IMG/VR virus record: IMGVR_UViG_3300049215_000771
Span: 468,730-532,729 of that record
Direction: 5' to 3' (one strand)
Length of the DNA stretch: 64,000 bases
Part shown: positions 4,682 to 34,853 of the stretch, piece after piece
How positions within the stretch are numbered: position 1 is the first letter of the stretch
Layout of the letters: each line of letters opens with the position of its first letter
Position numbers and translations under genes: made by a program
Notes under the pieces: model-generated
What the model saw: only the letters and a program-made list of their open reading frames with translations
The model's database searches: none
What the model was told of the DNA's origin: nothing

Positions 4682-5322
4682 TGCGTCCCGCTTTCCACAC
4701 TCGGCTCGGCAGCATGGACCCCAGCGATCCCTGCGAAGTTGATGGGAACCTCGCTGTCCACGACCAGCGTGCCCACGGCGTCGTGCAGCACGATATTGCG
4801 AGCGCCCAGGGCGGCGATGGCGTCCTGAACGGCCTGCGGGTTGGCGTCATCGGTGAGGGTCACGATATACTGGTACTGACCAACTTCCTTCACTTCCTGG
4901 CTGTTCTCAACGCCACTGATGGCGGCGAAGTTGAGGGGAACCTCGCTGTCAACGGTCATGAGGCCCATGCCGTGAATCTCGATGTTGCGAGCGCCCTGCG
5001 CCGCCACAGCTTGTTTCACGGCCTCCAGGGTAGCCGTCGAGTCGAGGGCTTCCGCCGTCAGGGTCAGGACGTACTTCTTCATCTTCGTCTTGCCTTTCTT
5101 CTTGCGTGCTTCGTACTCGGCGATTTTGTTCGACATGAGGACCATGTGGGTCAAACCGCCAACAAACCCCAGCACTACGGATATGATCGTGATCCAGGGC
5201 ATAGTTCCTAGACGGGAATCTAGGAATATGCCCAGGATCATCGGGGCGACCATTTCCATGCCGCACTGAGCAAGGGCCATATACATGCCCATTTCTTTGC
5301 GATCACCGTCGTTCGGGATCAT
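4678..5322 (-). CDS. AtpZ/AtpI-like membrane domain in frame with a duplicated ~55-aa domain
   Basis: GMEMVAPMILGIFLDSRLGTMPW...LGFVGG; repeat GARNI...VDSEVP.NFA.I.GV occurs twice. Confidence 0.7.
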   Translation of the reverse strand: MIPNDGDRKEMGMYMALAQCGMEMVAPMILGIFLDSRLGTMPWITIISVVLGFVGGLTHMVLMSNKIAEYEARKKKGKTKMKKYVLTLTAEALDSTATLEAVKQAVAAQGARNIEIHGMGLMTVDSEVPLNFAAISGVENSQEVKEVGQYQYIVTLTDDANPQAVQDAIAALGARNIVLHDAVGTLVVDSEVPINFAGIAGVHAAEPSVESGTQ

Positions 5323-5702: not shown

Positions 5703-6226
5703 AGCTTCTTCCTCCGGTAATGGGAACGCTGGCGGTTTTCAAACGCCCAGCACTTGAACACTGTTTTCAGTTCTTCAGGTGAGGAAGCCCGGCGAAGCAC
5801 GGTCCCGTCGATCATTTCTTCAGTCAAAACCGTAATCAGGATGGGAGGTTCGCCTTCTCTGTCATTCTCTCCAATGCAAAAAACAGCCCTACCAGATTGG
5901 TAGAACTCAAATTCCTCGCCCTCGGAGCGCTGCTCTTTCTTGAATGCTGCCAAGAACAACGGATCGACAACCCTGGCCCCTGCTTCCTTGGCCTCCCGAT
6001 ACCGCTGAACAATTGAACGGTCGATGTACCTGGCCCCGATGTAAATGGCCTCTCGAATGTCCCGCTGAAGATTGGCACAAGTCACACAACCTGGACACTT
6101 CCCCAGGTGTTCGTAACGCTTGGGATCAGCGATGCGCTCGATCCAGCGTTCACGAGCATGAGGCGTAATGATGATAAGGTATGGCTTGCGAACAGGCACA
6201 TCAGGGGTTGGAGGCTGCTCGTCCAT
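5699..6226 (-). CDS. Hypothetical protein
   Basis: ITPHARERW motif and two CxxC. Confidence 0.6.
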   Translation of the reverse strand: MDEQPPTPDVPVRKPYLIIITPHARERWIERIADPKRYEHLGKCPGCVTCANLQRDIREAIYIGARYIDRSIVQRYREAKEAGARVVDPLFLAAFKKEQRSEGEEFEFYQSGRAVFCIGENDREGEPPILITVLTEEMIDGTVLRRASSPEELKTVFKCWAFENRQRSHYRRKKL

Positions 6227-6235
6227 ACCCCCATC

Positions 6236-6730
6236 TTACCCTGAAAAATCCTGGTTGTAAAGTCCCTTGCGAAGATACCACCGATTTGCTTCAAGGTACT
6301 GGAGGGTTCCGTTAAACTCCTCCTGCGGCACCCGGCTGAAATACTGGTTGATCCAGTTTTGCGCCTCGACGTTACTGGCCGGCATTGTCGGCACGGGAAT
6401 GAAGTACAAGGTGATTGTGGTCGGGTTGCATAGCTCGAACAGTTCGCCTTCGGGAATCTCCTCGAACTGGTCGAGCAGCATCATGAAAGCACAACAAACT
6501 CGATGCTCCTCGTCGATGCCGATGAGAAACATCCCTTCCGGCCACTTATTGGGAGGAAGATACATCTGATGCGTTCGCATGTAGCGAACGCAATTCGCCA
6601 TCCGACTCAGGGTCGGATCATCCTCGAAGAAACCTTCGTCACGTTTGAGTGGGTTGTCGGGATCGACGAGTTTGTGAATAGGAACAAGAATCGGCTTCAA
6701 CGCTCCAAGTTCCCAATCAGGACTGTCCAT
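6236..6730 (-). CDS. Hypothetical protein
   Basis: Start MDSPDW directly after upstream stop. Confidence 0.6.
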   Translation of the reverse strand: MDSPDWELGALKPILVPIHKLVDPDNPLKRDEGFFEDDPTLSRMANCVRYMRTHQMYLPPNKWPEGMFLIGIDEEHRVCCAFMMLLDQFEEIPEGELFELCNPTTITLYFIPVPTMPASNVEAQNWINQYFSRVPQEEFNGTLQYLEANRWYLRKGLYNQDFSG

Positions 6731-11971: not shown

Positions 11972-12213
11972 GCATCGTCGATGCTCCTGTGTTTCTTGTT
12001 GACCACCACTTCGATGGGATCAACACAAACAACACTCCCATCTGCCAGTTCCACAATTATACAAAGACCGTGGGAGTCGTGGTACTCTCGAACGTACCCG
12101 ACTCCCTCCACCGGCTCTCCGTGATGTTCTGTGTCGTATTCGTTGCCGTTGGTGCCTCGGAAGTATACCGTTTTACCAACGGCATCACGACACTTCTCCC
12201 ACAAATTTCTCAT
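11965..12213 (-). CDS. Small protein with C-terminal HRSIDD
   Basis: KKHRSIDDAT*. Confidence 0.65.
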   Translation of the reverse strand: MRNLWEKCRDAVGKTVYFRGTNGNEYDTEHHGEPVEGVGYVREYHDSHGLCIIVELADGSVVCVDPIEVVVNKKHRSIDDAT

Positions 12214-13412
12214 TTCTTCAACACCACCGAAGAACCATCGCTCCGATCCCGAATCTCACAACCCAGGTCGATGATCCTTCTTTTCAGGGCATCGGCCCCA
12301 GCCCAATTTCGCTGCCGCCTGCATTCCTCTCGGAGTTTGGCAAGCTGGATGGCGTCGTCGGGAGCATCCTCATCCGAGAACATCTGGAAACCGAGTAATT
12401 CGGCTTGCTCCAGGCTGGGATTCACGAAAGTCGCTGCGATGGCTTCCGAAGTATTCAGGTTGGCGTCCATCGCCTTGGCGAAATCTTCCGAAACTCCATG
12501 TTCTGGTGCCGACTTCAGCCGATTCCTCAAAGCCTTCCACTGTTGCGCCGAAGTCCCATCCAACAACCCTTCAACGGATAAAGGTTTGGCATAACTGGCC
12601 GAGAGAATCCAGAAGCGAATCACGTTGGGGTCCGTGCCATTCGCCCGATAGTCCCGGATGTTGACGGCGTTCCCCTCGGATTTTCCCATCCTCCTGTCGC
12701 CGATCTGAACCATCCCATTGTGGAGCCAGATGTCCGCCAAGGGCGATCCGGCATGAAGGCATTCGGACTGAGCGATCTCATTCTCGTGATGCGGAAACTT
12801 CAAATCGTCGCCGCCCACATGAATATCCACCGTGAACCCAATGGTCCTTTCAATCATGATGGAGCATTCAAGATGCCAACCAGGTCGCCCCTTGGGGAAT
12901 TCAGACTCATTGGCCTTCGGCCCCTTCCACAAAACGAAATCTTCCGCCGTTTTCCGACGTGAAAGTTTCCCATATCCAGGGAACGTCTTCGTTTTGAAGC
13001 GAATGTCGCCATCTTTGTGGTAAGCATGGCCACTTTCGACAAGCGCCGTAGCTGCAACCTTCATCGGGATCATGTAGTCCGTCACACGGGGGTACAAGTC
13101 CGCCTTCTGGACGTTCAGCCAGCCCATGTCATTGAAATAGTCGTCGATGAAGCGGTCAGCCAGTTCTTTGCTGGTCACGCCCTCCTTTGCCGCCCGATCC
13201 ACGATTTTGTCGTCCACGTCCGTAAAATTCTGAACGTGGTAGACCTTCTGCCGGCGTTTGAGCCAGCGTTTCAGCACGTCCCACACAACATAGCTCCTGG
13301 CGTGTCCCAGGTGGCAGTAGTCGTAGACCGTTACACCACAAGCGTACATAGTGATCGGGCGGTCACTAGGGACTTCTTTTTCACGCCGGGTTAGGGAGTC
13401 GTGCAGTTTCAT
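12210..13412 (-). CDS. cysS: Cysteine--tRNA ligase (compact)
   Basis: MYACGVTVYDYCHLGHAR, NFTDVDDKI, GRPGWHLECS, FPHHENEIAQ, RMGKS. Confidence 0.96.
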   Translation of the reverse strand: MKLHDSLTRREKEVPSDRPITMYACGVTVYDYCHLGHARSYVVWDVLKRWLKRRQKVYHVQNFTDVDDKIVDRAAKEGVTSKELADRFIDDYFNDMGWLNVQKADLYPRVTDYMIPMKVAATALVESGHAYHKDGDIRFKTKTFPGYGKLSRRKTAEDFVLWKGPKANESEFPKGRPGWHLECSIMIERTIGFTVDIHVGGDDLKFPHHENEIAQSECLHAGSPLADIWLHNGMVQIGDRRMGKSEGNAVNIRDYRANGTDPNVIRFWILSASYAKPLSVEGLLDGTSAQQWKALRNRLKSAPEHGVSEDFAKAMDANLNTSEAIAATFVNPSLEQAELLGFQMFSDEDAPDDAIQLAKLREECRRQRNWAGADALKRRIIDLGCEIRDRSDGSSVVLKK

Positions 13413-13448
13413 GCGCCCATAGTACCCCGATTTAGAAGAAGTGTAAAG

Positions 13449-13527
13449 TAGCCTCGGTGGGAGTCGAACCCACATCCTTTCGGCACCGGGTTTAAGCCGG
13501 CTGCGTATACCGTTCCGCCACGAGGCC
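13449..13527 (-). tRNA. tRNA-Leu(UAA)
   Basis: GCCGG-CTTAAAC-CCGGT. Confidence 0.93.
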
Positions 13528-13531
13528 ATTC

Positions 13532-13573
13532 AACCAAATCGGTTGAAAGTTGGTGTTTTCAACCGATTTGGTT
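13532..13573. repeat. Perfect inverted repeat between PheRS and tRNA
   Basis: AACCAAATCGGTTGAAA...TTTCAACCGATTTGGTT. Confidence 0.8.
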
Positions 13574-14640
13574 TATCTAATCTCGACCTTCAATTCCTTC
13601 ATCCGGTCACGAAGCTGTTGCTGACGGGCGTTGATTTCCTCGTTCGTCAGCACCCGATCCATCGACCTGTAGGTGATGCGGTAGCAATGAGATTCCCGCT
13701 CACCTTTTTTGAAAGAATCCAGCAGCTTGACACTTTCAACCAGATCGCCGTGTAGATCACGAACAATCTGGTAGAAATCGTTCTCGCTGTAGCCAGCCGG
13801 AATCCAGAACGCCATGTCTTTGACACACGGCGGCTGGACCGAGAATGGCTTGAATTTAGAGTCCAGGTCTTTGAACTGGTTGAGGAAGCGTTCGTCCTCA
13901 CTCCAGAACAATCGGATGTCCGGGATGTCGAAAACAAGCATTGCCAGCCGCTCCAGGCCAACACCGAACGCCCAGCCCTGGGTGTAGTCACTGTAGTTGT
14001 CACCAAGAGGCCCAAGGGCTTCACAGCGCTTGATAACATCGGGATGGACGATGCCACAACCCGCTACTTCCAGCCACTCGCCATTCCATTCGATCTCCAA
14101 CTCCCAAGAAGGGTTCGTGAACGGGAAGTAGGAGTCCACGAATCTGTAGTTCAACTGCCGGTTATGTGGGCTGTACGGGATGTTGAGAACTCGTTCTATC
14201 ATGTCGAACATATGTTCCTTCAACATCCTCTCAAGGTCCAATGTCTGATATTTCGCCTTGTGAAAAAGGCCCACGCCTTCAACCTGGTGGAACACCGGGT
14301 AATGCGTGCGATCAATGGTGTCTCGCCGGTACACGTCGCCACAGACCAGGAACTTCATGTGTCCCTTGTTGATGAGCATGTGCTGATGGGCGCTGGTATG
14401 CGTCCTCAGAACGTGCTTCTCGTCAACGTAGTAGGTGTCAGAAGGCCGGCGAGAGGGATGGTCGGGTGGAATCAGCAGATGGTCGAAGTTATCTTCCACT
14501 GTCACCACCGGCCCGAACGTCTCGTAGATTTCGTGGCCGGGGAAGGCCATATAGATAGCCTTCTTGACAATTTCGAGCGGGTGTCGTTCCTTCAGATGGA
14601 GGTTACGCCCCATTTTTTCTTTGATGCTCGGCGGGATCAT
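13573..14640 (-). CDS. Monomeric (mitochondrial-type) phenylalanine--tRNA ligase
   Basis: LRTHTSAHQ, YRRDTIDRTHYPVFHQ, YFPFTNPS, GWAFGVGLERLAM, C-terminal FDX-ACB domain (YRSMDRVLTNEEIN). Confidence 0.95.
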   Translation of the reverse strand: MIPPSIKEKMGRNLHLKERHPLEIVKKAIYMAFPGHEIYETFGPVVTVEDNFDHLLIPPDHPSRRPSDTYYVDEKHVLRTHTSAHQHMLINKGHMKFLVCGDVYRRDTIDRTHYPVFHQVEGVGLFHKAKYQTLDLERMLKEHMFDMIERVLNIPYSPHNRQLNYRFVDSYFPFTNPSWELEIEWNGEWLEVAGCGIVHPDVIKRCEALGPLGDNYSDYTQGWAFGVGLERLAMLVFDIPDIRLFWSEDERFLNQFKDLDSKFKPFSVQPPCVKDMAFWIPAGYSENDFYQIVRDLHGDLVESVKLLDSFKKGERESHCYRITYRSMDRVLTNEEINARQQQLRDRMKELKVEIR

Positions 14641-14807
14641 GGCTTACCGTCCTGATCGACCCAAATCATGCGGAAGTTTTTGCCGCTCCACTCCATGTGG
14701 TAGCCTTGGCTTTTCATGTAGGCGTAGTGCATGGCGGCAATGCCAAAAACCACGGCGAACAACAAAACATACCAACGAATTTCTTTCCACATATTTCACC
14801 CTTTCAG

Positions 14808-14898
14808 CGGAAGAGAAGGGAATTGAACCCTTGCCGGACAATTAAGCCGGGCCAGTTTTCGAGACTGGTGCAGCAATCACAACATCTGCCTCTCTTCC
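14808..14898 (-). tRNA. tRNA-Ser(CGA)
   Basis: CCAGT-CTCGAAA-ACTGG, G73. Confidence 0.92.
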
Positions 14899-15479
14899 TT
14901 GGAGCCGCACTACGACCATCGTGGCCCCCACGCCTATCGTAGTTTTCGCAACCGGGCCTGAGAACGGCTTTTGACGGCCAACACAGGACTTAACTGGTGC
15001 TGGATGCGGCATAAATAGGGACCGTGCTGCGACCATCATAGTCCTCGACGAATGTATCGCAACTTTTCCAGCCGGACTTACCGAACGTGTTTTCGTTCTT
15101 GCCCCCGGCGCTCCAGGCGAAGGTCTTTTTCAACCATAGGAGTCGGTAAGGCAGCTTGAACTATTCACTCGGATACTGTTTGGATACGGCCCTCGTCGAA
15201 CAGTCCTCCCAGGCTTGTAGGATTTCTCGTTCGGGCAAGGTTGTGCGCACAACCTTGTCGGGTCCAAAGCGACTCAGCCAGTGTGCTATTACGCCAAAAG
15301 GATTGCACACCAGGTAGCCTAACCTGGGTGCGTTTACTCCCACTCTTTGAATGGTGGCTGCCTCTAAGCCAACATCCTGGCTATCTCCGTTTAGCTTTGG
15401 CGGCGAGTTTATACAGCCCGCCGTGATATATCCCGATTCCTTCATCCTGGTGGATGCCCAACCATTTCGATGAAGGAAG
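14899..15479 (-). ncRNA. Large ncRNA candidate containing a 23S rRNA GTPase-centre (H42-H44) like domain
   Basis: No credible ORF between two tRNAs; 15386-15270 reads AGATAGCCAGGATGTTGGCTTAGAGGCAGCCACCATTCAAAGAGTG-(insert)-GCGTAATAGCACACTGGCTGAGTCG. Confidence 0.8.
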
Positions 15480-21141: not shown

Positions 21142-22323
<1,182 letters not shown>

Positions 22324-23006: not shown

Positions 23007-23097
23007 TTGGCAAGGTGGGATTCGATACCCACACGGTAGATTCGTCAACCTACCAACCCCCTCTAGCGGGGGCTGCGTCTTCTTCCGCCACTTGCCA
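23007..23097 (-). tRNA. Leu-like tRNA with 8-nt anticodon loop and 8-nt T loop
   Basis: GCCCC-CGCTAGAG-GGGGT; T loop TATCGAAT. Confidence 0.7.
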
Positions 23098-23098
23098 G

Positions 23099-23174
23099 TG
23101 TCCAAGGTGGGACTCGAACCCACAAAATCACCAGATTCTCAACCTGGCGGCTTTGCCAATTTGCCTACCTGGAC
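23099..23174 (-). tRNA. tRNA-Leu(GAG), short variable loop
   Basis: CCAGG-TTGAGAA-TCTGG. Confidence 0.88.
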
Positions 23175-27060: not shown

Positions 27061-27172
27061 AAGGGCGTGCAGGATGATGGGACTCGAACCCACCTGTACC
27101 TACCTTGCACGGCTTGCGCCGCTTGGGGACTCGCTGCCAACTGCTCATTACGGTCACACCCTGCACGCCCTT
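27061..27172 (-). ncRNA. tRNA-like RNA with 16-bp terminal stem
   Basis: AAGGGCGTGCAGGGTG/CATCCTGCACGCCCTT plus T-arm GTGGG-TTCGAGT-CCCAT; no canonical anticodon arm. Confidence 0.65.
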
Positions 27173-27776: not shown

Positions 27777-27894
27777 CGGATCAGAACGGGACTCGAACCC
27801 GCAACATGAATTTGGGTAGCGATTTTGCTACAAGACCCCCATGTACCTTACCTTTTTAGGGCTTAGTGCTTCTGCCGTTTCTGCCACCTGATCC
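27777..27894 (-). ncRNA. 118-nt expanded tRNA-like RNA
   Basis: GGATCAG/CTGATCC-G, D- and T-arms, loop CTAAAAA, ~45-nt variable region. Confidence 0.65.
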
Positions 27895-29256: not shown

Positions 29257-29556
29257 TCACGTTTCGACCTTCACCAATTTGCCAAAGACCCCGTTGCGGC
29301 CAACCCAGCCGTTAATATGGCCTCGGTTGTTCCCGATCTGGTAGCGGTCCCCCTGGACTGCCTTCACCAGATGAAGATATTGACGACCGGCGACCTTGCA
29401 CAAGACAACATCACCAACTTCAATATCACCGCTGATGGGTTCCACGGTGCAGAGTTGGCCGCTATCGACCTTTCCCTTCATCGAGGAACCCCGTGGACGA
29501 AACTTCACAGTCTCGCCCGCCTGCAACTTCGAGATGTAGCCGGTTGCCCAGCCCAT
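29257..29556 (-). CDS. S24/S26 peptidase-like small protein
   Basis: RGSSM...VGDVVLCKV...LHLVKA...GNN. Confidence 0.7.
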   Translation of the reverse strand: MGWATGYISKLQAGETVKFRPRGSSMKGKVDSGQLCTVEPISGDIEVGDVVLCKVAGRQYLHLVKAVQGDRYQIGNNRGHINGWVGRNGVFGKLVKVET

Positions 29557-29579
29557 ATTTGCCGCCTTTGTGTGGGTAT

Positions 29580-29635
29580 AAAAAAAGAACCCCGGCAGCC
29601 TGTTTCCCTTTTGAGGATTCGGCTGCCGGGGTTCT
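29580..29635 (-). terminator. Strong intrinsic terminator (attenuator 3:4 hairpin)
   Basis: 15-bp AGAACCCCGGCAGCC/GGCTGCCGGGGTTCT followed by a T run. Confidence 0.9.
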
Positions 29636-29653
29636 ACCCCCACAAAGTCCTTG

Positions 29654-29737
29654 TCAGACCGTGCAGCCTCCCTCAGCGCTATACGAAAATAGCGACGACG
29701 AGGAAAACAGACTAAGTGACAAGGAGAAGAAATTCAC
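29654..29737 (-). CDS. Leader peptide MNFFSLSLSLFSSSSLFSYSAEGGCTV
   Basis: GTG start after AAAGGG; 18 consecutive F/S/L/Y codons; TGA 18 nt before the terminator. Confidence 0.8.
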   Translation of the reverse strand: MNFFSLSLSLFSSSSLFSYSAEGGCTV

Positions 29738-29766
29738 GGTTTTTCCCTTTTGTTCAGGTTATGACT

Positions 29767-29795
29767 ATGGTAGTCGCCCTGGTTCAAAAAATCAA
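29767..29795 (-). promoter_or_regulatory. Sigma70-type promoter
   Basis: TTGATT-N17-TACCAT. Confidence 0.65.
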
Positions 29796-29859
29796 GGGAA
29801 GTTCCGAAAAATTCTTCCCCCTTGTTTCGACGGTTGGCTGGCTTTGTTCAATTTCCCCT

Positions 29860-29990
29860 ACACCAGCACGCCGGGACATAGCCGGACAGCAGCCAGTTCA
29901 TTGCCTCACTCGATCTCGGTTTCCCGGTGGCCGATATATTGGCTCCCTGGCGGAACCCGGCAATGCCGGTAATCCCGCTACACTGCGCCG
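29860..29990 (-). ncRNA. Structured RNA candidate
   Basis: CGGGAT/GTCCCG, CCGG/CCGG, CATTGCC/GGCAATG, GGTTCC/GGAGCC. Confidence 0.45.
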
Positions 29991-30001
29991 CAACCATCTA
30001 G

Positions 30002-30151
30002 CGAACCACCCAGGAGTCGAACCTGGAGGTTGGACCGGCGTGTACACCCCCGGTGGCCCCAACCCTGGAAACCTCACTTTCCCCCATCAAAAACAAGGTC
30101 GGTTTGCAACCCTTCCATGTTCCATCAAGGTACTCGTTATCCTAGTGGTCC
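30002..30151 (-). ncRNA. 150-nt tRNA-like RNA
   Basis: GGACCAC/GTGGTTC-G acceptor, CCAGG-TTCGACT-CCTGG T-arm, expanded interior. Confidence 0.6.
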
Positions 30152-30163
30152 AATCGTACACAG

Positions 30164-30272
30164 CGGAGAAGGTAGGAGTCGAACCTACAATGTCGGCGGG
30201 AGTTCCCCAGGGAATGCTTGGAACAATACACCTGGGTACTAGCCGCCCGCTTTGCCGTTTGCGTACTTCTCC
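30164..30272 (-). ncRNA. 109-nt tRNA-like RNA with elongated anticodon arm
   Basis: GGAGAAG/CTTCTCC-G, D-arm, T-arm; ~55-nt hairpin replaces the anticodon arm. Confidence 0.7.
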
Positions 30273-30443
30273 GGGAGGCGGTTTGATTACGGCCCAAACC
30301 AGCCAAGAAAAGCCGGTTCGTTTTACGTCTGAATCCAGACGGAGTTGAGTTAAGGCCAACAGCAAAAGCCCGGTCAGTTTACATCGGACTCCAGATGGGC
30401 CAGTTTTAAGTCGTGGCTCCCGACCATCATGACAAGGGTTATA

Positions 30444-30761
30444 CTACTCCGGTTTTTCGGGGTTGTAAACCTCGTTCTGCCATTTTCCTCGCATCCTGCC
30501 AAGATTGTAGCCGGCCAGCAGGGTCATGCGAATGATCCCCACCTTCTGCGTGATCTCAGGGTCATTTTCTGCGCCCCTGGCCAGCGTTTCCGGCTCGAAA
30601 ACGCCCGTCATGTACATCGCCAGCAAATTCTTGAGCGAGGGCTTGTCCCCATCAGCCGGCTCCTGGCACAGAAGCGGCTGGTTAATCAGCTTCATCGCTT
30701 CGTCCAGACAGGCGAAGAACTCCTCGTTGTCCTTGTAGAGTCTGCTTTGCTCATCCGACAT
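30444..30761 (-). CDS. Hypothetical protein
   Basis: Coupled ORF. Confidence 0.55.
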   Translation of the reverse strand: MSDEQSRLYKDNEEFFACLDEAMKLINQPLLCQEPADGDKPSLKNLLAMYMTGVFEPETLARGAENDPEITQKVGIIRMTLLAGYNLGRMRGKWQNEVYNPEKPE

Positions 30762-31518
30762 GATGGTTCTCCAGGAAGTTGTACACGCACCTGTCCGTGC
30801 CGATGGCGACTTCCAGCACCTTGGCCTGGCACACCTGCCCCGAAGATTGTGTCCACTTGCAGTCCGTTCGCTTCGAGATCGAACAGACTTCCATCTTGGT
30901 GGAATCGCAAACAATGTCCACCGTTTCCTCACTGTAGGAAGGCAGCCGGTCACTCTTCTCGACGTAGCAAAGGCCGATCATGTCAGAAATCATCTTCTTG
31001 ACCGCCCCGATCACAGCCTTGCTGTAGTCGTTCTGCGTGGTGACGCCGTACATGCACTGGAATTCCAACTGGTAGAACTCCTTGAGTCGCATATTTTTTG
31101 TCACCTGGTCCTGCTCACGCCGGAACGACTTGCCATGCTGCCAGACGCATATCGGCAGCCTCGTTTTCGTTTCGGTGTGGTCCAGGAGCCACTGGCCGAA
31201 CAAATACGATCCCATCGTCGTTTCGGGGCGCAAAGCCAGGGTATCGTAATCCAGGACCGTATTGGCGTATGTGCCGCCCACAGCCCCTTCTTCCCGCTCA
31301 ACCGCAGGAACGTAGATGTCAGCGGGCGTATAGTTGGGGTTGATGAAGTCTCGTGGCGTCAGAATCGGCGCTTCCACCTGGATCATCTCGAAGGCTCGGT
31401 TCTCGGCTTTGAGAATATCCCTCATGCCGGCCACGAAGTAATCCACCATCATGTTGCGCAGGCGGATTTCCTTCTCGGTCCAGAAAATCAGACCGTTCCG
31501 GTTATACAAACTATCCAT
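30751..31518 (-). CDS. Minimal class II aaRS core, GlyRS (alpha2)-like
   Basis: LRPETT, QHGKSFRRE, MRLKEFYQLEFQ, EVCSISKRTD, VLEVAIGTDR; no anticodon domain. Confidence 0.8.
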   Translation of the reverse strand: MDSLYNRNGLIFWTEKEIRLRNMMVDYFVAGMRDILKAENRAFEMIQVEAPILTPRDFINPNYTPADIYVPAVEREEGAVGGTYANTVLDYDTLALRPETTMGSYLFGQWLLDHTETKTRLPICVWQHGKSFRREQDQVTKNMRLKEFYQLEFQCMYGVTTQNDYSKAVIGAVKKMISDMIGLCYVEKSDRLPSYSEETVDIVCDSTKMEVCSISKRTDCKWTQSSGQVCQAKVLEVAIGTDRCVYNFLENHHVG

Positions 31519-31762: not shown

Positions 31763-33298
31763 TTATGAAAAGTTACTGCTGTCAGGAGTCGAATCCGGCA
31801 CGTCGGCAGGAGGACTCCAGTTGTCGGACACCGGAATCTCGGCGAACGATTGTGGCGGCGTCGAGTCCGGGACATAGGGACTGGCGTTTTCCAAACTCGG
31901 CGTCGAATCAGGAATCGACGCTCCAACGTCATCCTGAACCGGGTCCGAGTTGGGAATGTCGGGTTGCGCCGGCCAGTCACTCGGCGAAACCTGTTCGGTT
32001 GCTGCGGGTGGTGTCCAGTCCGTGCCAGGAGCATCCGGCCCGGAAGGTGTCGAATCAGGAACCACCGCCTGCGCCGGCCAGCCATCAGCCACAGGCACAA
32101 TGGCATCGGCGACACCAGGCGTCGAATCGGGAACGTCGGGTTGTTGTTCCCAAAAAATACCAGGAAGTCCGGTCGGATCATCCCGCATGTAAGAAGGTTG
32201 GCTGAAGTTGCTCACGATGTCGGCCAGGGCGTAGCCCATGTCCTCGATGAATTCCGGCTCCATGTAGAAGCTGTCGAAATCATCGTCATACATGATCTGA
32301 TGGACTTCACGCTTGCGGTAATACTTCTTGACGTAGGCAGCACGGCTACCCGTCGCCTTGTAGAAGCCAGCCTTGTCCTTCTCCATGCCGGGCACGGCAC
32401 TGGTGAAGTCCTGAATTCGCTTCAGATACTTCCGGTCGCCAATATCGCCGTGCCAGATATGGTAAAGATCACCCTCCACGAAGGACAAAGGCGAACGCAG
32501 GTCTTGCTGCACCATCACCAGACGAGCAGCCTGGTAAAACCGCCTCGACCATTCCAGGGTGTCATCCAGATTGTCAGCATAGCCTTTCTGGATGCAGGGA
32601 TGCGGAATCTGGCCGGCGACGGCATGGGCGAGGATATGGTCGGCCCCGCCAATGAGAGCCTTCTCGTACAACGGGCACTGCTCCAGCACTTCCCGCCGTG
32701 CGCCCCAGGCAAAACCGACATGCCCATGCAAGTCGTAATTCTCGTTGAGCGAAAGAACCATGTTCGTGTCGAAATTGGCGGCAAAACTGCGCCAAACCTT
32801 CTTGTTGCGATGCTCCACGTCGTTGGAGTAGACCTTCACCTGGTCCACGTTGAAAGAAGGAACCAGCTTGTGCTTGTCCAGGTGAACACACCACTCGAAC
32901 GGTTGAATGACGGCGGCGTGCTGCAACGCCTCGACACCTTGCGGCAGCCACCATTTGTTGGTGAACAACACGTCGGCGTCCACCCAAAAAATGTACTTGT
33001 ACTGCGAGGGAAGTTCTGCGACGACCTTGTTGAGAAGGGCTTCTTTGTGGAACAGAAGTGTGTCGGCGTGGACCCGTGTGATGTTCGGACTGTCAGGAAG
33101 CTGTTGTTTCGCATCGGGGCCGACCAGACACTCGATGATCCGATGCGGCAAATGCTTGATCGAGTGATACCACTTCTGGAATGCCAGAAGGCGGTAAGGC
33201 GAGCATTGCGGGTTGAAGAAACATGACACGATCACGGCTTCGGAATGCGTGCGATAACGATTCCGGTTGGTGAAAGTGTTTTTGAGCCAGTCGAACAT
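31763..33298 (-). CDS. Glycosyltransferase-like protein with PDSTP-repeat tail
   Basis: FHKEALLN, FWVDADV, GFAWGARR, GGAD, YHIWHG. Confidence 0.7.
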   Translation of the reverse strand: MFDWLKNTFTNRNRYRTHSEAVIVSCFFNPQCSPYRLLAFQKWYHSIKHLPHRIIECLVGPDAKQQLPDSPNITRVHADTLLFHKEALLNKVVAELPSQYKYIFWVDADVLFTNKWWLPQGVEALQHAAVIQPFEWCVHLDKHKLVPSFNVDQVKVYSNDVEHRNKKVWRSFAANFDTNMVLSLNENYDLHGHVGFAWGARREVLEQCPLYEKALIGGADHILAHAVAGQIPHPCIQKGYADNLDDTLEWSRRFYQAARLVMVQQDLRSPLSFVEGDLYHIWHGDIGDRKYLKRIQDFTSAVPGMEKDKAGFYKATGSRAAYVKKYYRKREVHQIMYDDDFDSFYMEPEFIEDMGYALADIVSNFSQPSYMRDDPTGLPGIFWEQQPDVPDSTPGVADAIVPVADGWPAQAVVPDSTPSGPDAPGTDWTPPAATEQVSPSDWPAQPDIPNSDPVQDDVGASIPDSTPSLENASPYVPDSTPPQSFAEIPVSDNWSPPADVPDSTPDSSNFS

Positions 33299-33336
33299 AC
33301 ACTTCTCCTGTAGGAAGACAGGAAACTAGCTAAGTG

Positions 33337-33960
33337 CTAGTTTCCTGCAAGTTTGGCATGACCCAAGTAGTCGAAAGTTTCATCGGGGTTGCGACGACAG
33401 TAGCCTCGTACCAAGTCGCTGAACAACACCATCGTTTGATAACGGGCCAGCATCTTTCGGATGCTCTCCAACGGAACACAGTGGGTTTCCTGGTTCTTCT
33501 CAAAAAGAAGCTGCGCTGCCGCTTCCAGTTCAGCCTTGTACAACTGCTTGTCCAGCAAGTATGGAGCAATGTCGTTGATCCACCAGGGCGAAGTGGGTTC
33601 CTCGATCTGCACCTTGTACTTGTACTGAACCGCCATGTCGAAGTACGGCATCATCTCGGCGATCCGGGTGTTCGTGTTATCCACGATCACCAGCGGGCGC
33701 TGACGCTGCATGGACTCCCGAACACGACGCTGACACCAGGAGTGTGCGTGATGCAACTTATCCTTCGTCCAGGAAGCGACGTATTCCTCCTTCGTCAAGC
33801 CGAAATAATGGTCAGCCGAGAAGATGACGGTATCATCCCCACCCGACAATTCCTTCGCTCGGTAGCTCTTCCCGGATGCAGGCAAGCCACGCATCAGGAT
33901 GAGCGTCAACTCATTGAGCGGGTCTTGCATCCACTGGAACAGGGGATCGTTGATGTTCAC
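33337..33960 (-). CDS. P-loop polynucleotide kinase-like (AAA_33/N4BP2-like)
   Basis: MRGLPASGKS, FSADHYF, IVDNTN, HCVP. Confidence 0.85.
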   Translation of the reverse strand: MNINDPLFQWMQDPLNELTLILMRGLPASGKSYRAKELSGGDDTVIFSADHYFGLTKEEYVASWTKDKLHHAHSWCQRRVRESMQRQRPLVIVDNTNTRIAEMMPYFDMAVQYKYKVQIEEPTSPWWINDIAPYLLDKQLYKAELEAAAQLLFEKNQETHCVPLESIRKMLARYQTMVLFSDLVRGYCRRNPDETFDYLGHAKLAGN

Positions 33961-34145: not shown

Positions 34146-34853
34146 TTACCTCAGCTTGTTTTTCTTGATCTCATCCCCCAACAGGCATCCCTGTTGAAAA
34201 CCTTCTCGGACCATCTTGAAGCGATCCGTTACCCATTTGCCGTCAGACACCTTGATGTAAATACCTTCCCTGGTTTTTGAGGCGAAGTGGGACGGCCTGT
34301 TGGCAATTTCTTCAAGAAACTCGTAGCTTTGTGCCGATCCCCACACGTCCAAAGGGATCACCTGGAATCCGGCCCGGTTCAGGGCATCCAGACTCGTCAG
34401 CGGGTCAATGTAGTTCCCAGCCTCCTGATCGTACAAGTCGTAGGCGATGAACCAGTCCGGCAACAAGTCGTACTCCATACCGTGCTGCTGAACCATCCAC
34501 TCTCCATAGACCGTGACGGGGCCGACAAGGTTCGTAATTTCCTCAAACTTGTCCTTGTTCTTGTAGAACCAGTTGAACGCCCCGGCAAACTGCGACAGCG
34601 AAGGGTTCAAGTCCTTGCTCAGATCGCCTTTACGGAGAATCTTCGTTCGGTTCCGAATCACTGGATGGCCGTCCACCAATGCCATACCACAGTTAGCCCC
34701 GTCGATTTTCTCCTGAACCATGCAGCGAGAGCCGAAAATGACCGCCGCTTCTTGTTCGGAGGCGATGCGGTCCCCTTTCGTGTTCGGCTTCCAGGGCAGG
34801 TGCCGAGTTGCAGGGTATTCCGGCAGCAGGCTCGTGAGTTTCACCTTTTTCAT
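34146..34853 (-). CDS. RNA ligase family protein
   Basis: YPATRHLPW, QEKIDGAN, VYGEW, FIAYD, EGIYIK, KMVR. Confidence 0.88.
   Translation of the reverse strand: MKKVKLTSLLPEYPATRHLPWKPNTKGDRIASEQEAAVIFGSRCMVQEKIDGANCGMALVDGHPVIRNRTKILRKGDLSKDLNPSLSQFAGAFNWFYKNKDKFEEITNLVGPVTVYGEWMVQQHGMEYDLLPDWFIAYDLYDQEAGNYIDPLTSLDALNRAGFQVIPLDVWGSAQSYEFLEEIANRPSHFASKTREGIYIKVSDGKWVTDRFKMVREGFQQGCLLGDEIKKNKLR

What the first reader, a model, noticed from the sequence alone, without database searches (positions are those of the whole stretch)
30002..30272. Tandem oversized tRNA-like RNAs (150 and 109 nt) downstream of the minimal GlyRS-like gene
Both have 7-bp acceptor stems, G73, perfect T-arms and the same CT trailer as the true tRNAs, but long inserted hairpins replace the anticodon arm. 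The 150-mer contains an internal GG-TTGCAAA-CC (Cys-like) loop. They could be substrates of the anticodon-blind synthetase, or precursors spliced by the nearby kinase/ligase (speculative).
Basis: partly seen in the sequence, partly recalled or inferred. Interest (0 to 1): 0.6.

Follow-up and report, generated by a model that had tools for sequence, protein, structure and literature searches.

The report
Non-decoding tRNA-like RNAs, huge phage
Two oversized genes in a 533-kb phage keep the top half of a tRNA but have no usable anticodon loop; they are conserved in related phages, so they are probably tRNA mimics rather than decoding tRNAs, and an apparently circular RNA lies just after them.

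Summary
Window 30164-30272(-) (109 nt) and 30002-30151(-) (150 nt) each have a 7-bp acceptor stem, a perfect T arm and the N73-C-T trailer found in 51 of 56 tRNAs of this 532,729-bp phage. The 109-mer passes Rfam's tRNA threshold (38.3 bits); the 150-mer matches no family. Both are conserved. The 109-mer occurs in four related phages, with 7 compensatory pairs and 100% pairing. The 150-mer occurs in two, and all 11 helix substitutions keep pairing. In the 109-mer the anticodon stem runs through an invariant AGUA/GAA internal loop (sarcin-ricin or loop E type) into a hairpin that varies in length. Position 33 is G in three of four orthologs, and the acceptor stem looks like Ser, not Thr. A spliced tRNA-Thr(AGU) is therefore unlikely. 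The 150-mer has three extra hairpins and no 7-nt anticodon loop. Both lie in one RNA operon (promoter, repeat leader, 109-mer, 150-mer, 174-nt RNA, terminator), downstream of a minimal class II synthetase-like gene and a kinase/RNA-ligase cluster. One metatranscriptome contig shows the 174-nt RNA as a closed circle. Best reading: non-decoding tRNA mimics that are matured like tRNAs. Charging and splicing remain untested.

The parts
30441..30469 (-). sigma-70-like promoter TTTACA-17 nt-TAGTAT for the RNA operon
   Evidence: The same TTTACA-17-TAGGAT / TATTAT arrangement is seen upstream of the orthologs in L014 and L032.
30273..30434 (-). about 160-nt leader with a 35-nt direct repeat (30308-30342 and 30364-30398), each holding a small hairpin
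   Evidence: The leader is 70-77% identical in L025 and L032; L032 has three copies.
30164..30272 (-). 109-nt tRNA-like RNA: full tRNA body; the anticodon stem is extended through an AGUA/GAA internal loop into a hairpin
   Evidence: Rfam tRNA 38.3 bits. Four orthologs, 26 pairs 100% paired, 7 pairs with compensatory change. Fold z-score -2.9.
30002..30151 (-). 150-nt tRNA-like RNA: acceptor stem and T arm plus three extra hairpins (RNA positions 29-62, 70-85, 87-125)
   Evidence: Ortholog at L014:7367-7513. Three compensatory and five one-sided changes, all pairing kept. Single copy in the genome. No Rfam family.
29825..29998 (-). 174-nt structured RNA with paired ends, starting 3-4 nt after the 150-mer's discriminator; appears as a closed circle in one metatranscriptome
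   Evidence: X13 contig of 204 nt = 174 + 30 overlap, 'goes back 174'. Fold z-score -3.2. Three orthologs, 97% paired, 5 compensatory pairs.
29775..29824 (-). terminator-like hairpin followed by a run of six T
   Evidence: The stem plus T6-7 is kept in L014 and L025 although the sequence differs. The hairpin energy is weak (-9 kcal/mol), and the scanner did not flag it.
30444..30762 (-). conserved 90-106 aa ORF overlapping the stop of the synthetase-like gene
   Evidence: no Pfam or PHROG family.
30751..31518 (-). minimal class II aminoacyl-tRNA-synthetase-like core (255 aa), no anticodon-binding domain
   Evidence: PF00587 at 32 bits. Profile search hits GlyRS structures at E 1e-8 to 1e-5. 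Motif 2 and motif 3 residues are invariant in 27 homologs.
33337..33960 (-). P-loop kinase (AAA_33, polynucleotide-kinase-like)
34146..34853 (-). ATP-dependent RNA ligase (PF09414), one of three in the genome
37532..38167 (-). histidine phosphatase (His_Phos_1), syntenic with the ligase/kinase cluster in L014 and L025

Best explanation
The 109-mer and the 150-mer are genes for non-decoding tRNA mimics.

Shown: they are transcribed-looking units in one RNA operon with its own promoter and terminator, and their structures are under selection.

Inferred: because they keep the acceptor stem, the T arm, the tRNA core nucleotides (109-mer) and the N73-C-U trailer of the phage's real tRNAs, they are cut out by RNase P and the tRNA 3' endonuclease. 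They would then receive CCA from the phage's own CCA-adding enzyme. The tRNA body would thus serve as a processing and stability scaffold.

The working part is what replaces the anticodon loop. In the 109-mer it is a conserved bulged-G (sarcin-ricin / loop E type) internal loop, a typical protein-binding module. In the 150-mer it is three hairpins, one tipped by the palindromic loop UUGCAA. They would then bind tRNA-handling or RNA-repair proteins, as bacterial YrlA Y RNAs do, rather than read codons. Candidate partners are the adjacent synthetase-like enzyme, the kinase/ligase set and the phage's Ro60-like protein.
For: - Structure under selection. 109-mer family: 4 sequences, 100% of cells paired, 7 pairs changed on both sides, against 0-1 in slid controls. 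150-mer: all 11 helix substitutions keep pairing.
- No canonical anticodon loop. The 5'-C-N-AGUA / GAA-N-U-3' loop and the CCC/GGG helix are invariant, while the apical hairpin varies from 19 to 44 nt. The two variable loop positions lie opposite each other (U.C in the window, G.A in the three orthologs).
- The window copy reads CUAGUAC / GGAAC. E. coli 23S sarcin-ricin loop reads CUAGUAC...GGACC.
- Position 33 is G in 3 of 4 orthologs.
- The acceptor GGAGAAG with G73 resembles the phage's tRNA-Ser. It does not resemble its tRNA-Thr (GCC..., U73). Thr GGT, CGT and TGT genes already exist.
- The 150-mer has no 7-nt loop on a 5-bp stem and no Rfam hit.
- Shared N73-C-T trailer and a phage CCA-adding enzyme.
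- Own promoter and terminator.
- Gene order with the RNA-repair and synthetase-like genes is kept in 4 phages.
- A Ro60-like protein is encoded in the genome. tRNA-like Y RNAs are known partners of Ro60 and lie in RNA-repair operons (PMC4201824, PMC7790460).
Against: - No direct evidence of mature ends, CCA addition or protein binding.
- RNA support is thin. One 83-nt metatranscriptome contig piece overlaps the 150-mer and then continues into unrelated sequence. No contig covers the 109-mer.
- Only 4 and 2 sequences are available, so the motif assignment rests on few events.
- The Ro60-like gene is about 66 kb away, and no GNCGAA(N)G motif or Rfam YrlA match is present.
- Other oversized tRNAs of this phage do look like true intron-bearing tRNAs. 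An example is the only tRNA-Lys, with a 21-nt insert. An excision activity may therefore exist.
Confidence: 0.5

Rival explanations
1. They are intron-containing pre-tRNAs, like the 'enigmatic introns' of Lak megaphage tRNAs. An unknown endonuclease would remove the insert. The neighbouring kinase, phosphatase and RNA ligase would heal and seal the halves, giving tRNA-Thr(AGU) from the 109-mer.
For: - ARAGORN places the insert at the canonical 37/38 position in the window and in L014.
- Removing it leaves a perfect 5-bp stem and the loop CUAGUAC in the window.
- The heal-and-seal genes are 3-8 kb away and syntenic.
- Phage tRNA introns have been reported (PMC6784885, PMC13037316).
- The phage's only tRNA-Lys carries a 21-nt insert whose removal gives CUCUUAA. 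A second phage has the same-size insert with a covarying helix.
Against: - G33 in 3 of 4 orthologs.
- L025 lacks one nucleotide of the would-be loop.
- No bulge-helix-bulge motif; the anticodon-intron pairing is not kept.
- No EndA, RtcB or Tpt1 in the genome.
- The acceptor stem and discriminator are unlike the phage's Thr tRNAs, and A34-Thr is redundant here.
- For the 150-mer, the only 'anticodon' offered (Pro GGG) lies inside a helix whose neighbour covaries.
Confidence: 0.25
2. They are dedicated substrates of the adjacent minimal class II synthetase-like enzyme. The enzyme would recognise only the acceptor end and load an amino acid for a non-ribosomal purpose. This can be true together with the best explanation.
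For: - Conserved adjacency in four phages.
- The catalytic motifs are intact and there is no anticodon-binding domain.
- 7-bp acceptor stems with a CCA-ready trailer.
Against: - The discriminator is not conserved.
- The family of about 1,940 homologs mostly lacks these RNAs nearby.
- The 150-mer is missing from L025 and L032, which keep the enzyme.
Confidence: 0.15
3. They are decaying tRNA pseudogenes that picked up insertions and have no function.
For: The tRNA region is crowded with duplicated and odd tRNA-like copies.
Against: - Compensatory changes in every helix and invariant loop motifs across phages whose neighbouring protein is only 66% identical.
- Conserved promoter and terminator.
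Confidence: 0.03

Closest known systems
Intron-bearing tRNA genes of Lak and other huge phages (Devoto et al. 2019, PMC6784885; PMC13037316)
   Same: Oversized tRNA genes in a genome of about 0.5 Mb. The insert sits in the anticodon loop. There is no known excision mechanism.
   Different: Removing the insert here does not give a canonical loop in most orthologs. The part next to the stem is a conserved structured motif. The 150-mer has no definable exon/intron layout.
YrlA-type bacterial and phage Y RNAs (Chen et al. 2014, PMC4201824; rsr-yrlBA-rtcBA operon, PMC7790460)
   Same: Non-coding RNAs with tRNA-like D arm, T arm and acceptor. In M. smegmatis they are cut by RNase P and receive CCA. 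They are encoded beside RNA-repair enzymes. This phage also encodes a Ro60-like protein.
   Different: The topology differs: the ends are at the acceptor stem, not in a Ro-binding stem. There is no GNCGAA(N)G motif and no Rfam match. The genes are not within 4 kb of the Ro60-like gene.
Sarcin-ricin loop / loop E bulged-G motif of rRNA
   Same: AGUA opposite GAA next to a Watson-Crick pair. The window copy shares the 7-mer CUAGUAC with E. coli 23S 2652-2658.
   Different: There is no GAGA tetraloop; the motif is an internal loop inside a tRNA-like anticodon arm. The fold is inferred from sequence, not shown.
Phage T4 stable RNAs C and D in the tRNA cluster (own knowledge, not checked here)
   Same: Small stable RNAs of unknown function, co-transcribed and co-processed with phage tRNAs.
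   Different: No sequence relation was tested. T4's RNAs are not known to carry these motifs.
tmRNA
   Same: A tRNA-like acceptor and T-arm domain with the anticodon arm replaced.
   Different: ARAGORN finds no tmRNA. There is no G3-U70, no tag reading frame of the usual kind and no pseudoknots.

Membership tests
tRNA (Rfam RF00005) | Score at or above the gathering threshold over the full model | tested here: met
   109-mer: 38.3 bits against 29, model positions 1-71.
tRNA (Rfam RF00005) | Same criterion for the 150-mer | tested here: not met
   No match even at E<=10 in 29600-30500.
tRNA (decoding) | 7-nt anticodon loop with U33 on a 5-bp stem | tested here: not met
   109-mer: the loop is replaced by a 43-nt insert. 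After notional removal, position 33 is G in 3 of 4 orthologs. 150-mer: no such loop.
Archaeal/eukaryal-type tRNA intron | Bulge-helix-bulge motif (two 3-nt bulges 4 bp apart) at the splice sites | tested here: not met
   By inspection of the consensus structure: a 6x6 (6x5 in L025) internal loop with no 4-bp central helix.
Archaeal/eukaryal-type tRNA intron | Splicing endonuclease and RtcB, or a Trl1 plus Tpt1 pathway, encoded | tested here: not met
   PF01974, PF01139 and PF01885 are absent from the phage genome. The host genome is unknown.
Archaeal/eukaryal-type tRNA intron | Spliced RNA observed | tested here: inconclusive
   No metatranscriptome contig covers 30164-30272.
Group I intron in tRNA | Ribozyme core of 200 nt or more | tested here: not met
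   The insert is 36-61 nt, with no Rfam intron match.
YrlA / Y RNA | Ro60 ortholog in the genome | tested here: met
   621-aa protein with vWA_Ro60 at 51.5 bits and a weak TROVE match, L036:556-2421.
YrlA / Y RNA | Encoded within about 4 kb of Ro60 on the same strand; GNCGAA(N)G near the 5' end | tested here: not met
   About 66 kb away across the contig ends, and no such motif. No Rfam Y RNA hit at either locus.
tmRNA | Detected by ARAGORN; tag frame; G3-U70 | tested here: not met
   (-m) found none. The acceptor has G2-U71.

The most novel reading that the evidence does not exclude
The three RNAs form one phage RNA module. tRNA-type processing would release two tRNA mimics and a 174-nt RNA. 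One of the phage's RNA ligases would then close the 174-nt RNA into a circle. In the window copy this turns its 4-nt 3' tail into a GAAA loop on the terminal helix. The set would work with the adjacent kinase/ligase/phosphatase, the synthetase-like enzyme or the Ro60-like protein in RNA repair or counter-defence. That would be a phage-encoded circular non-coding RNA made without a ribozyme or intron, together with new tRNA-scaffolded protein-binding RNAs.
Probability: 0.2. Interest if true: 0.85.

Novelty: new variant of a known kind. Interest (0 to 1): 0.62.

Why it matters
Huge phages carry dozens of tRNAs, and "tRNAs with enigmatic introns" have been counted in them since 2019 without a mechanism. 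This case shows that at least some oversized tRNA genes are better read as conserved tRNA mimics with a defined structured insert. That changes how phage tRNA inventories and predicted suppressor or extra anticodons should be counted. It also gives concrete, small, testable RNAs (109, 150 and 174 nt). They sit beside an orphan synthetase-like enzyme and an RNA heal-and-seal cluster, in a genome that also encodes a Ro60-like protein. These are the same ingredients as the bacterial Rsr/Y-RNA/RtcB repair operon. If the 174-nt circle is real, it is a rare example of a circular non-coding RNA encoded by a phage.

Tried and rejected
- Exact-pattern scans of viral contigs and metagenome contigs for conserved blocks of the three RNAs found nothing new. 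only re-found the L025 record.
- The search for related loci with the synthetase-like protein found none in viral contigs.
- Orthologs came instead from the protein search plus contig look-ups.
- Covariance model R1 (150-mer) found only the window and L014 among 19 sources and the whole genome.
- A single-sequence PDB search with the synthetase-like protein gave only a spurious RecA-concatemer hit. The profile search was needed.
- The 511-aa neighbour was checked as a possible endonuclease. It looks like a GT2 glycosyltransferase.
- ARAGORN's reading of the 150-mer as tRNA-Pro(GGG) with a 60-nt intron and a giant variable arm was rejected. Its 'anticodon' lies in the 5' strand of hairpin C.
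- A 14-codon ORF inside the 150-mer and an endless frame round the 174-nt circle were judged chance. Indels in L014 break both.
- RNAalifold's alternative pairing of the 150-mer D region with the T arm cannot be excluded. Both sides are invariant.
- Permuted-tRNA and tmRNA readings of the circle were tested with ARAGORN on the doubled sequence and found nothing.

Full report
**Context.** The window is the last 64 kb of a single 532,729-bp IMG/VR virus record (52.7% G+C, CheckV 100% complete) assembled from moss metagenomes. ARAGORN finds 56 standard tRNAs. They lie on the + strand in the first 121 kb and on the - strand in the last 60 kb. The window also encodes EF-Tu, CysRS and a monomeric PheRS-like enzyme. 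This is a translation-rich huge phage.

**Observation.** On the minus strand, 30164-30272 and 30002-30151 each have a 7-bp acceptor stem, a 5-bp T stem with a TTCGACT loop, G73 and then CT.
- The 109-mer scores 38.3 bits against Rfam tRNA (gathering score 29), with a 43-nt insertion where the anticodon loop should be.
- The 150-mer matches no Rfam family at E<=10.
- N73-C-T follows 51 of the 56 ordinary tRNAs, and the genome encodes a CCA-adding enzyme. The trailer is therefore a shared processing signature.
- A simple acceptor plus T-arm scan gives about eight hits in the roughly 350 kb outside the tRNA regions. Two tandem hits with the right trailer are not chance.

**Orthologs.** The synthetase-like gene upstream (30751-31518) has about 1,940 homologs, many on contigs of 0.3-0.67 Mb. 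Contig look-ups gave three syntenic relatives.
- L014 (89% protein identity) carries a 135-nt and a 147-nt ortholog plus the downstream RNA.
- L025 (66%) carries a 110-nt ortholog of the 109-mer and the downstream RNA, but no 150-mer.
- L032 (66%) carries a 124-nt ortholog only.
- Eight other lineages of the gene family have ordinary tRNAs or no tRNAs there.

**The 109-mer family.**
- On a model-based alignment of the four sequences, all 26 pairs are standard in every sequence. Seven pairs changed on both sides: acceptor 3, T stem 2, extension helix 2. Slid controls gave 0-1.
- The tRNA core is kept: U8, A14, A15 with U48, GG in the D loop and the T loop.
- Between the anticodon stem (GGCGG/CCGCY) and an invariant CCC/GGG helix lies the internal loop 5'-C-N-AGUA / GAA-N-U(C)-3'. 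It is invariant except for the two N positions. These face each other and change together (U.C in the window, G.A in the other three).
- The hairpin beyond the helix varies from 19 to 44 nt and is unrelated in sequence.
- AGUA opposite GAA beside a Watson-Crick pair is the consensus of the bulged-G (sarcin-ricin / loop E) motif (established knowledge). The window copy reads CUAGUAC / GGAAC. E. coli 23S reads CCUAGUAC-GAGA-GGACCGG.

**Why a spliced tRNA-Thr(AGU) is unlikely.**
- ARAGORN's reading needs position 33 to be G in three of the four phages.
- L025 lacks one loop nucleotide.
- There is no bulge-helix-bulge motif.
- The acceptor (GGAGAAG, G73; GGAAAGG in L025) resembles the phage's tRNA-Ser genes. 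It does not resemble its three tRNA-Thr genes (GCC..., U73).
- The genome has no EndA, RtcB or Tpt1.
- The nearest paralog is a 76-nt tRNA with the same unusual D loop (window 23099-23174, 58.7 bits with model R2). The family therefore probably arose from a normal tRNA by expansion of the anticodon loop.

**The 150-mer.**
- With L014, all 11 substitutions inside helices keep pairing: 3 compensatory (3:147, 33:58, 99:117) and 5 one-sided. With two sequences the statistics are weak (54 of 500 shuffles reach the observed values).
- The supported layout is: acceptor, a 3-bp D-like stem, hairpin A (29-62), hairpin B (70-85), hairpin C (87-125) and the T arm.
  - Hairpin A has three short helices with 1x1 and 2x2 internal loops and the invariant tip G-UUGCAA-A.
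  - Hairpin B has 5 bp and a 6-nt loop.
  - Hairpin C has 12 bp with a 4-nt bulge and abuts the T arm like a giant variable arm.
- No 7-nt loop on a 5-bp stem exists.
Its six central bases are a palindrome.
- The fold energy alone is not unusual (z = -1.3).
- The RNA is single-copy and absent from L025 and L032.

**Transcription unit.**
- A TTTACA-17-TAGTAT promoter lies at 30469-30441. It recurs upstream of the L014 and L032 orthologs.
- A leader of about 160 nt holds two copies of a 35-nt repeat.
- The order is then the 109-mer, a 12-nt spacer, the 150-mer, CUA, a 174-nt RNA, and a hairpin followed by a T-run that is kept in the relatives.
- Gene callers place no ORF there in L014.

**The 174-nt RNA (29825-29998).**
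- It folds with z = -3.2.
- In three sequences it is 97% paired, with five pairs changed on both sides. Two of those pairs show three different Watson-Crick types.
- Its first 8 nt pair with the 3' end, leaving a 4-nt tail.
- In metatranscriptome run X13, a 204-nt contig maps as 29922-29825 followed by 29998-29893. That is a closed path of 174 nt plus the 30-nt k-mer overlap. A DNA run of a near-identical strain is colinear through 29367-30227.
- This points to a circular or tandemly joined RNA whose 5' end is 3-4 nt after the 150-mer's discriminator.
- The evidence is one low-depth contig (2.7x) from contigs, not raw reads.

**Other RNA evidence.** It is thin. An X5 contig shares 83 nt (one mismatch) with RNA positions 36-118 of the 150-mer. 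It then runs into 161 nt that are absent from the phage genome. No contig covers the 109-mer.

**Neighbours.**
- The synthetase-like protein has only the class II core (PF00587). Motif 2 and motif 3 are invariant, and its remote similarity is to GlyRS.
- A conserved 90-106 aa ORF overlaps its stop.
- Upstream lie a GT2-like protein, a P-loop kinase, an RNA ligase, an HNH protein and a histidine phosphatase. The same order is seen in L014 and L025.
- The genome has three RNA ligases.
- At 32078-33943 it has a 621-aa Ro60-like protein (vWA_Ro60 51.5 bits).

**Interpretation.** The data fit tRNA mimics that use the tRNA body for processing and stability and display a structured insert. The closest analogues are YrlA Y RNAs. 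These are tRNA-like, and in M. smegmatis they are RNase P and CCA substrates. They are encoded with Ro60 and RNA-repair enzymes (PMC4201824, PMC7790460). Membership in that family fails on location, motif and topology. Intron-bearing pre-tRNAs remain possible, because other oversized tRNAs in this phage do look spliceable. The lone tRNA-Lys with a 21-nt insert, whose helix covaries in L018, is the clearest case. Such phage tRNA 'introns' have been reported without a mechanism (PMC6784885). Charging by the adjacent enzyme is compatible with the mimic model but has only gene-order support.

Noticed in passing
window 29825-29998 (-): A 174-nt conserved, strongly structured RNA directly after the 150-mer. 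One metatranscriptome contig is a closed 174-nt circle, while the DNA is colinear. It matches no Rfam family.
   Followed up: partly
window 30273-30434 (-); repeats at 30308-30342 and 30364-30398: The leader of the RNA operon has two copies (three in L032) of a 35-nt unit holding a small hairpin followed by UAAAC. It is conserved in L014, L025 and L032.
   Followed up: partly
L001:871-995, 4872-4970, 6212-6336, 14780-14904; L002:14759-14888: Five further oversized tRNA-like genes share an insert of about 45 nt (AGUCUC..AUUUGUCCUWCGGGAAUG..GGGAUUACAU). In one of them it sits in the variable region beside an intact Phe-type anticodon arm. The same motif lies inside a tRNA-like gene of an unrelated low-GC viral contig (L004).
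   Followed up: partly
L001:13184-13277; L018:7880-7973: The phage's only tRNA-Lys gene has a 21-nt insert in the anticodon loop, with the anticodon paired to the insert. Another phage has an insert of the same size with compensatory changes in that helix. This looks like a genuine short intron class.
   Followed up: partly
L036:556-2421 (genome 32078-33943, +): A 621-aa Ro60/Rsr-like protein (vWA_Ro60 above cut-off, weak TROVE). A 130-nt oversized tRNA-like gene lies 0.8 kb downstream on the same strand and is a candidate Y RNA. Rfam finds no YrlA there.
   Followed up: partly
window 27069-27163 (-) and 27778-27893 (-): Two more non-canonical tRNA-like elements (95 and 116 nt). The 95-mer is conserved in L014:8916-9009, with two compensatory acceptor pairs and a covarying GCAA-tipped hairpin. 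Its trailer is not CT.
   Followed up: no
window 30034-30116: A metatranscriptome contig (run X5) matches 83 nt inside the 150-mer with one mismatch. It then continues for 161 nt that occur nowhere in the phage genome. It may be a chimera, a relative or a joined RNA.
   Followed up: partly
window 30102-30109 (-) (RNA positions 43-48 of the 150-mer are the palindrome): The tip loop G-UUGCAA-A contains a 6-nt palindrome that is invariant in L014. It could mediate loop-loop dimerisation.
   Followed up: no
whole genome; window 1-30300: 51 of 56 tRNAs are followed by C-T after the discriminator, and the phage has its own CCA-adding enzyme (genome about 257.3-257.8 kb). The class II tRNAs (Leu, Ser, Tyr) are all clustered in the window, and the other tRNAs lie at the opposite contig end on the other strand.
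   Followed up: partly
window 12210-13529, 13573-14640, 21142-22323 (-): The phage encodes CysRS, a monomeric (mitochondrial-type) PheRS-like enzyme and EF-Tu among the tRNA genes.
   Followed up: no
window 23007-23174 (-): A 76-nt 'tRNA-Leu(GAG)' without the long variable arm expected of bacterial tRNA-Leu is the closest paralog of the 109-mer. It is fused head-to-tail with a 91-nt odd tRNA that ARAGORN calls CUA or AGA.
   Followed up: no
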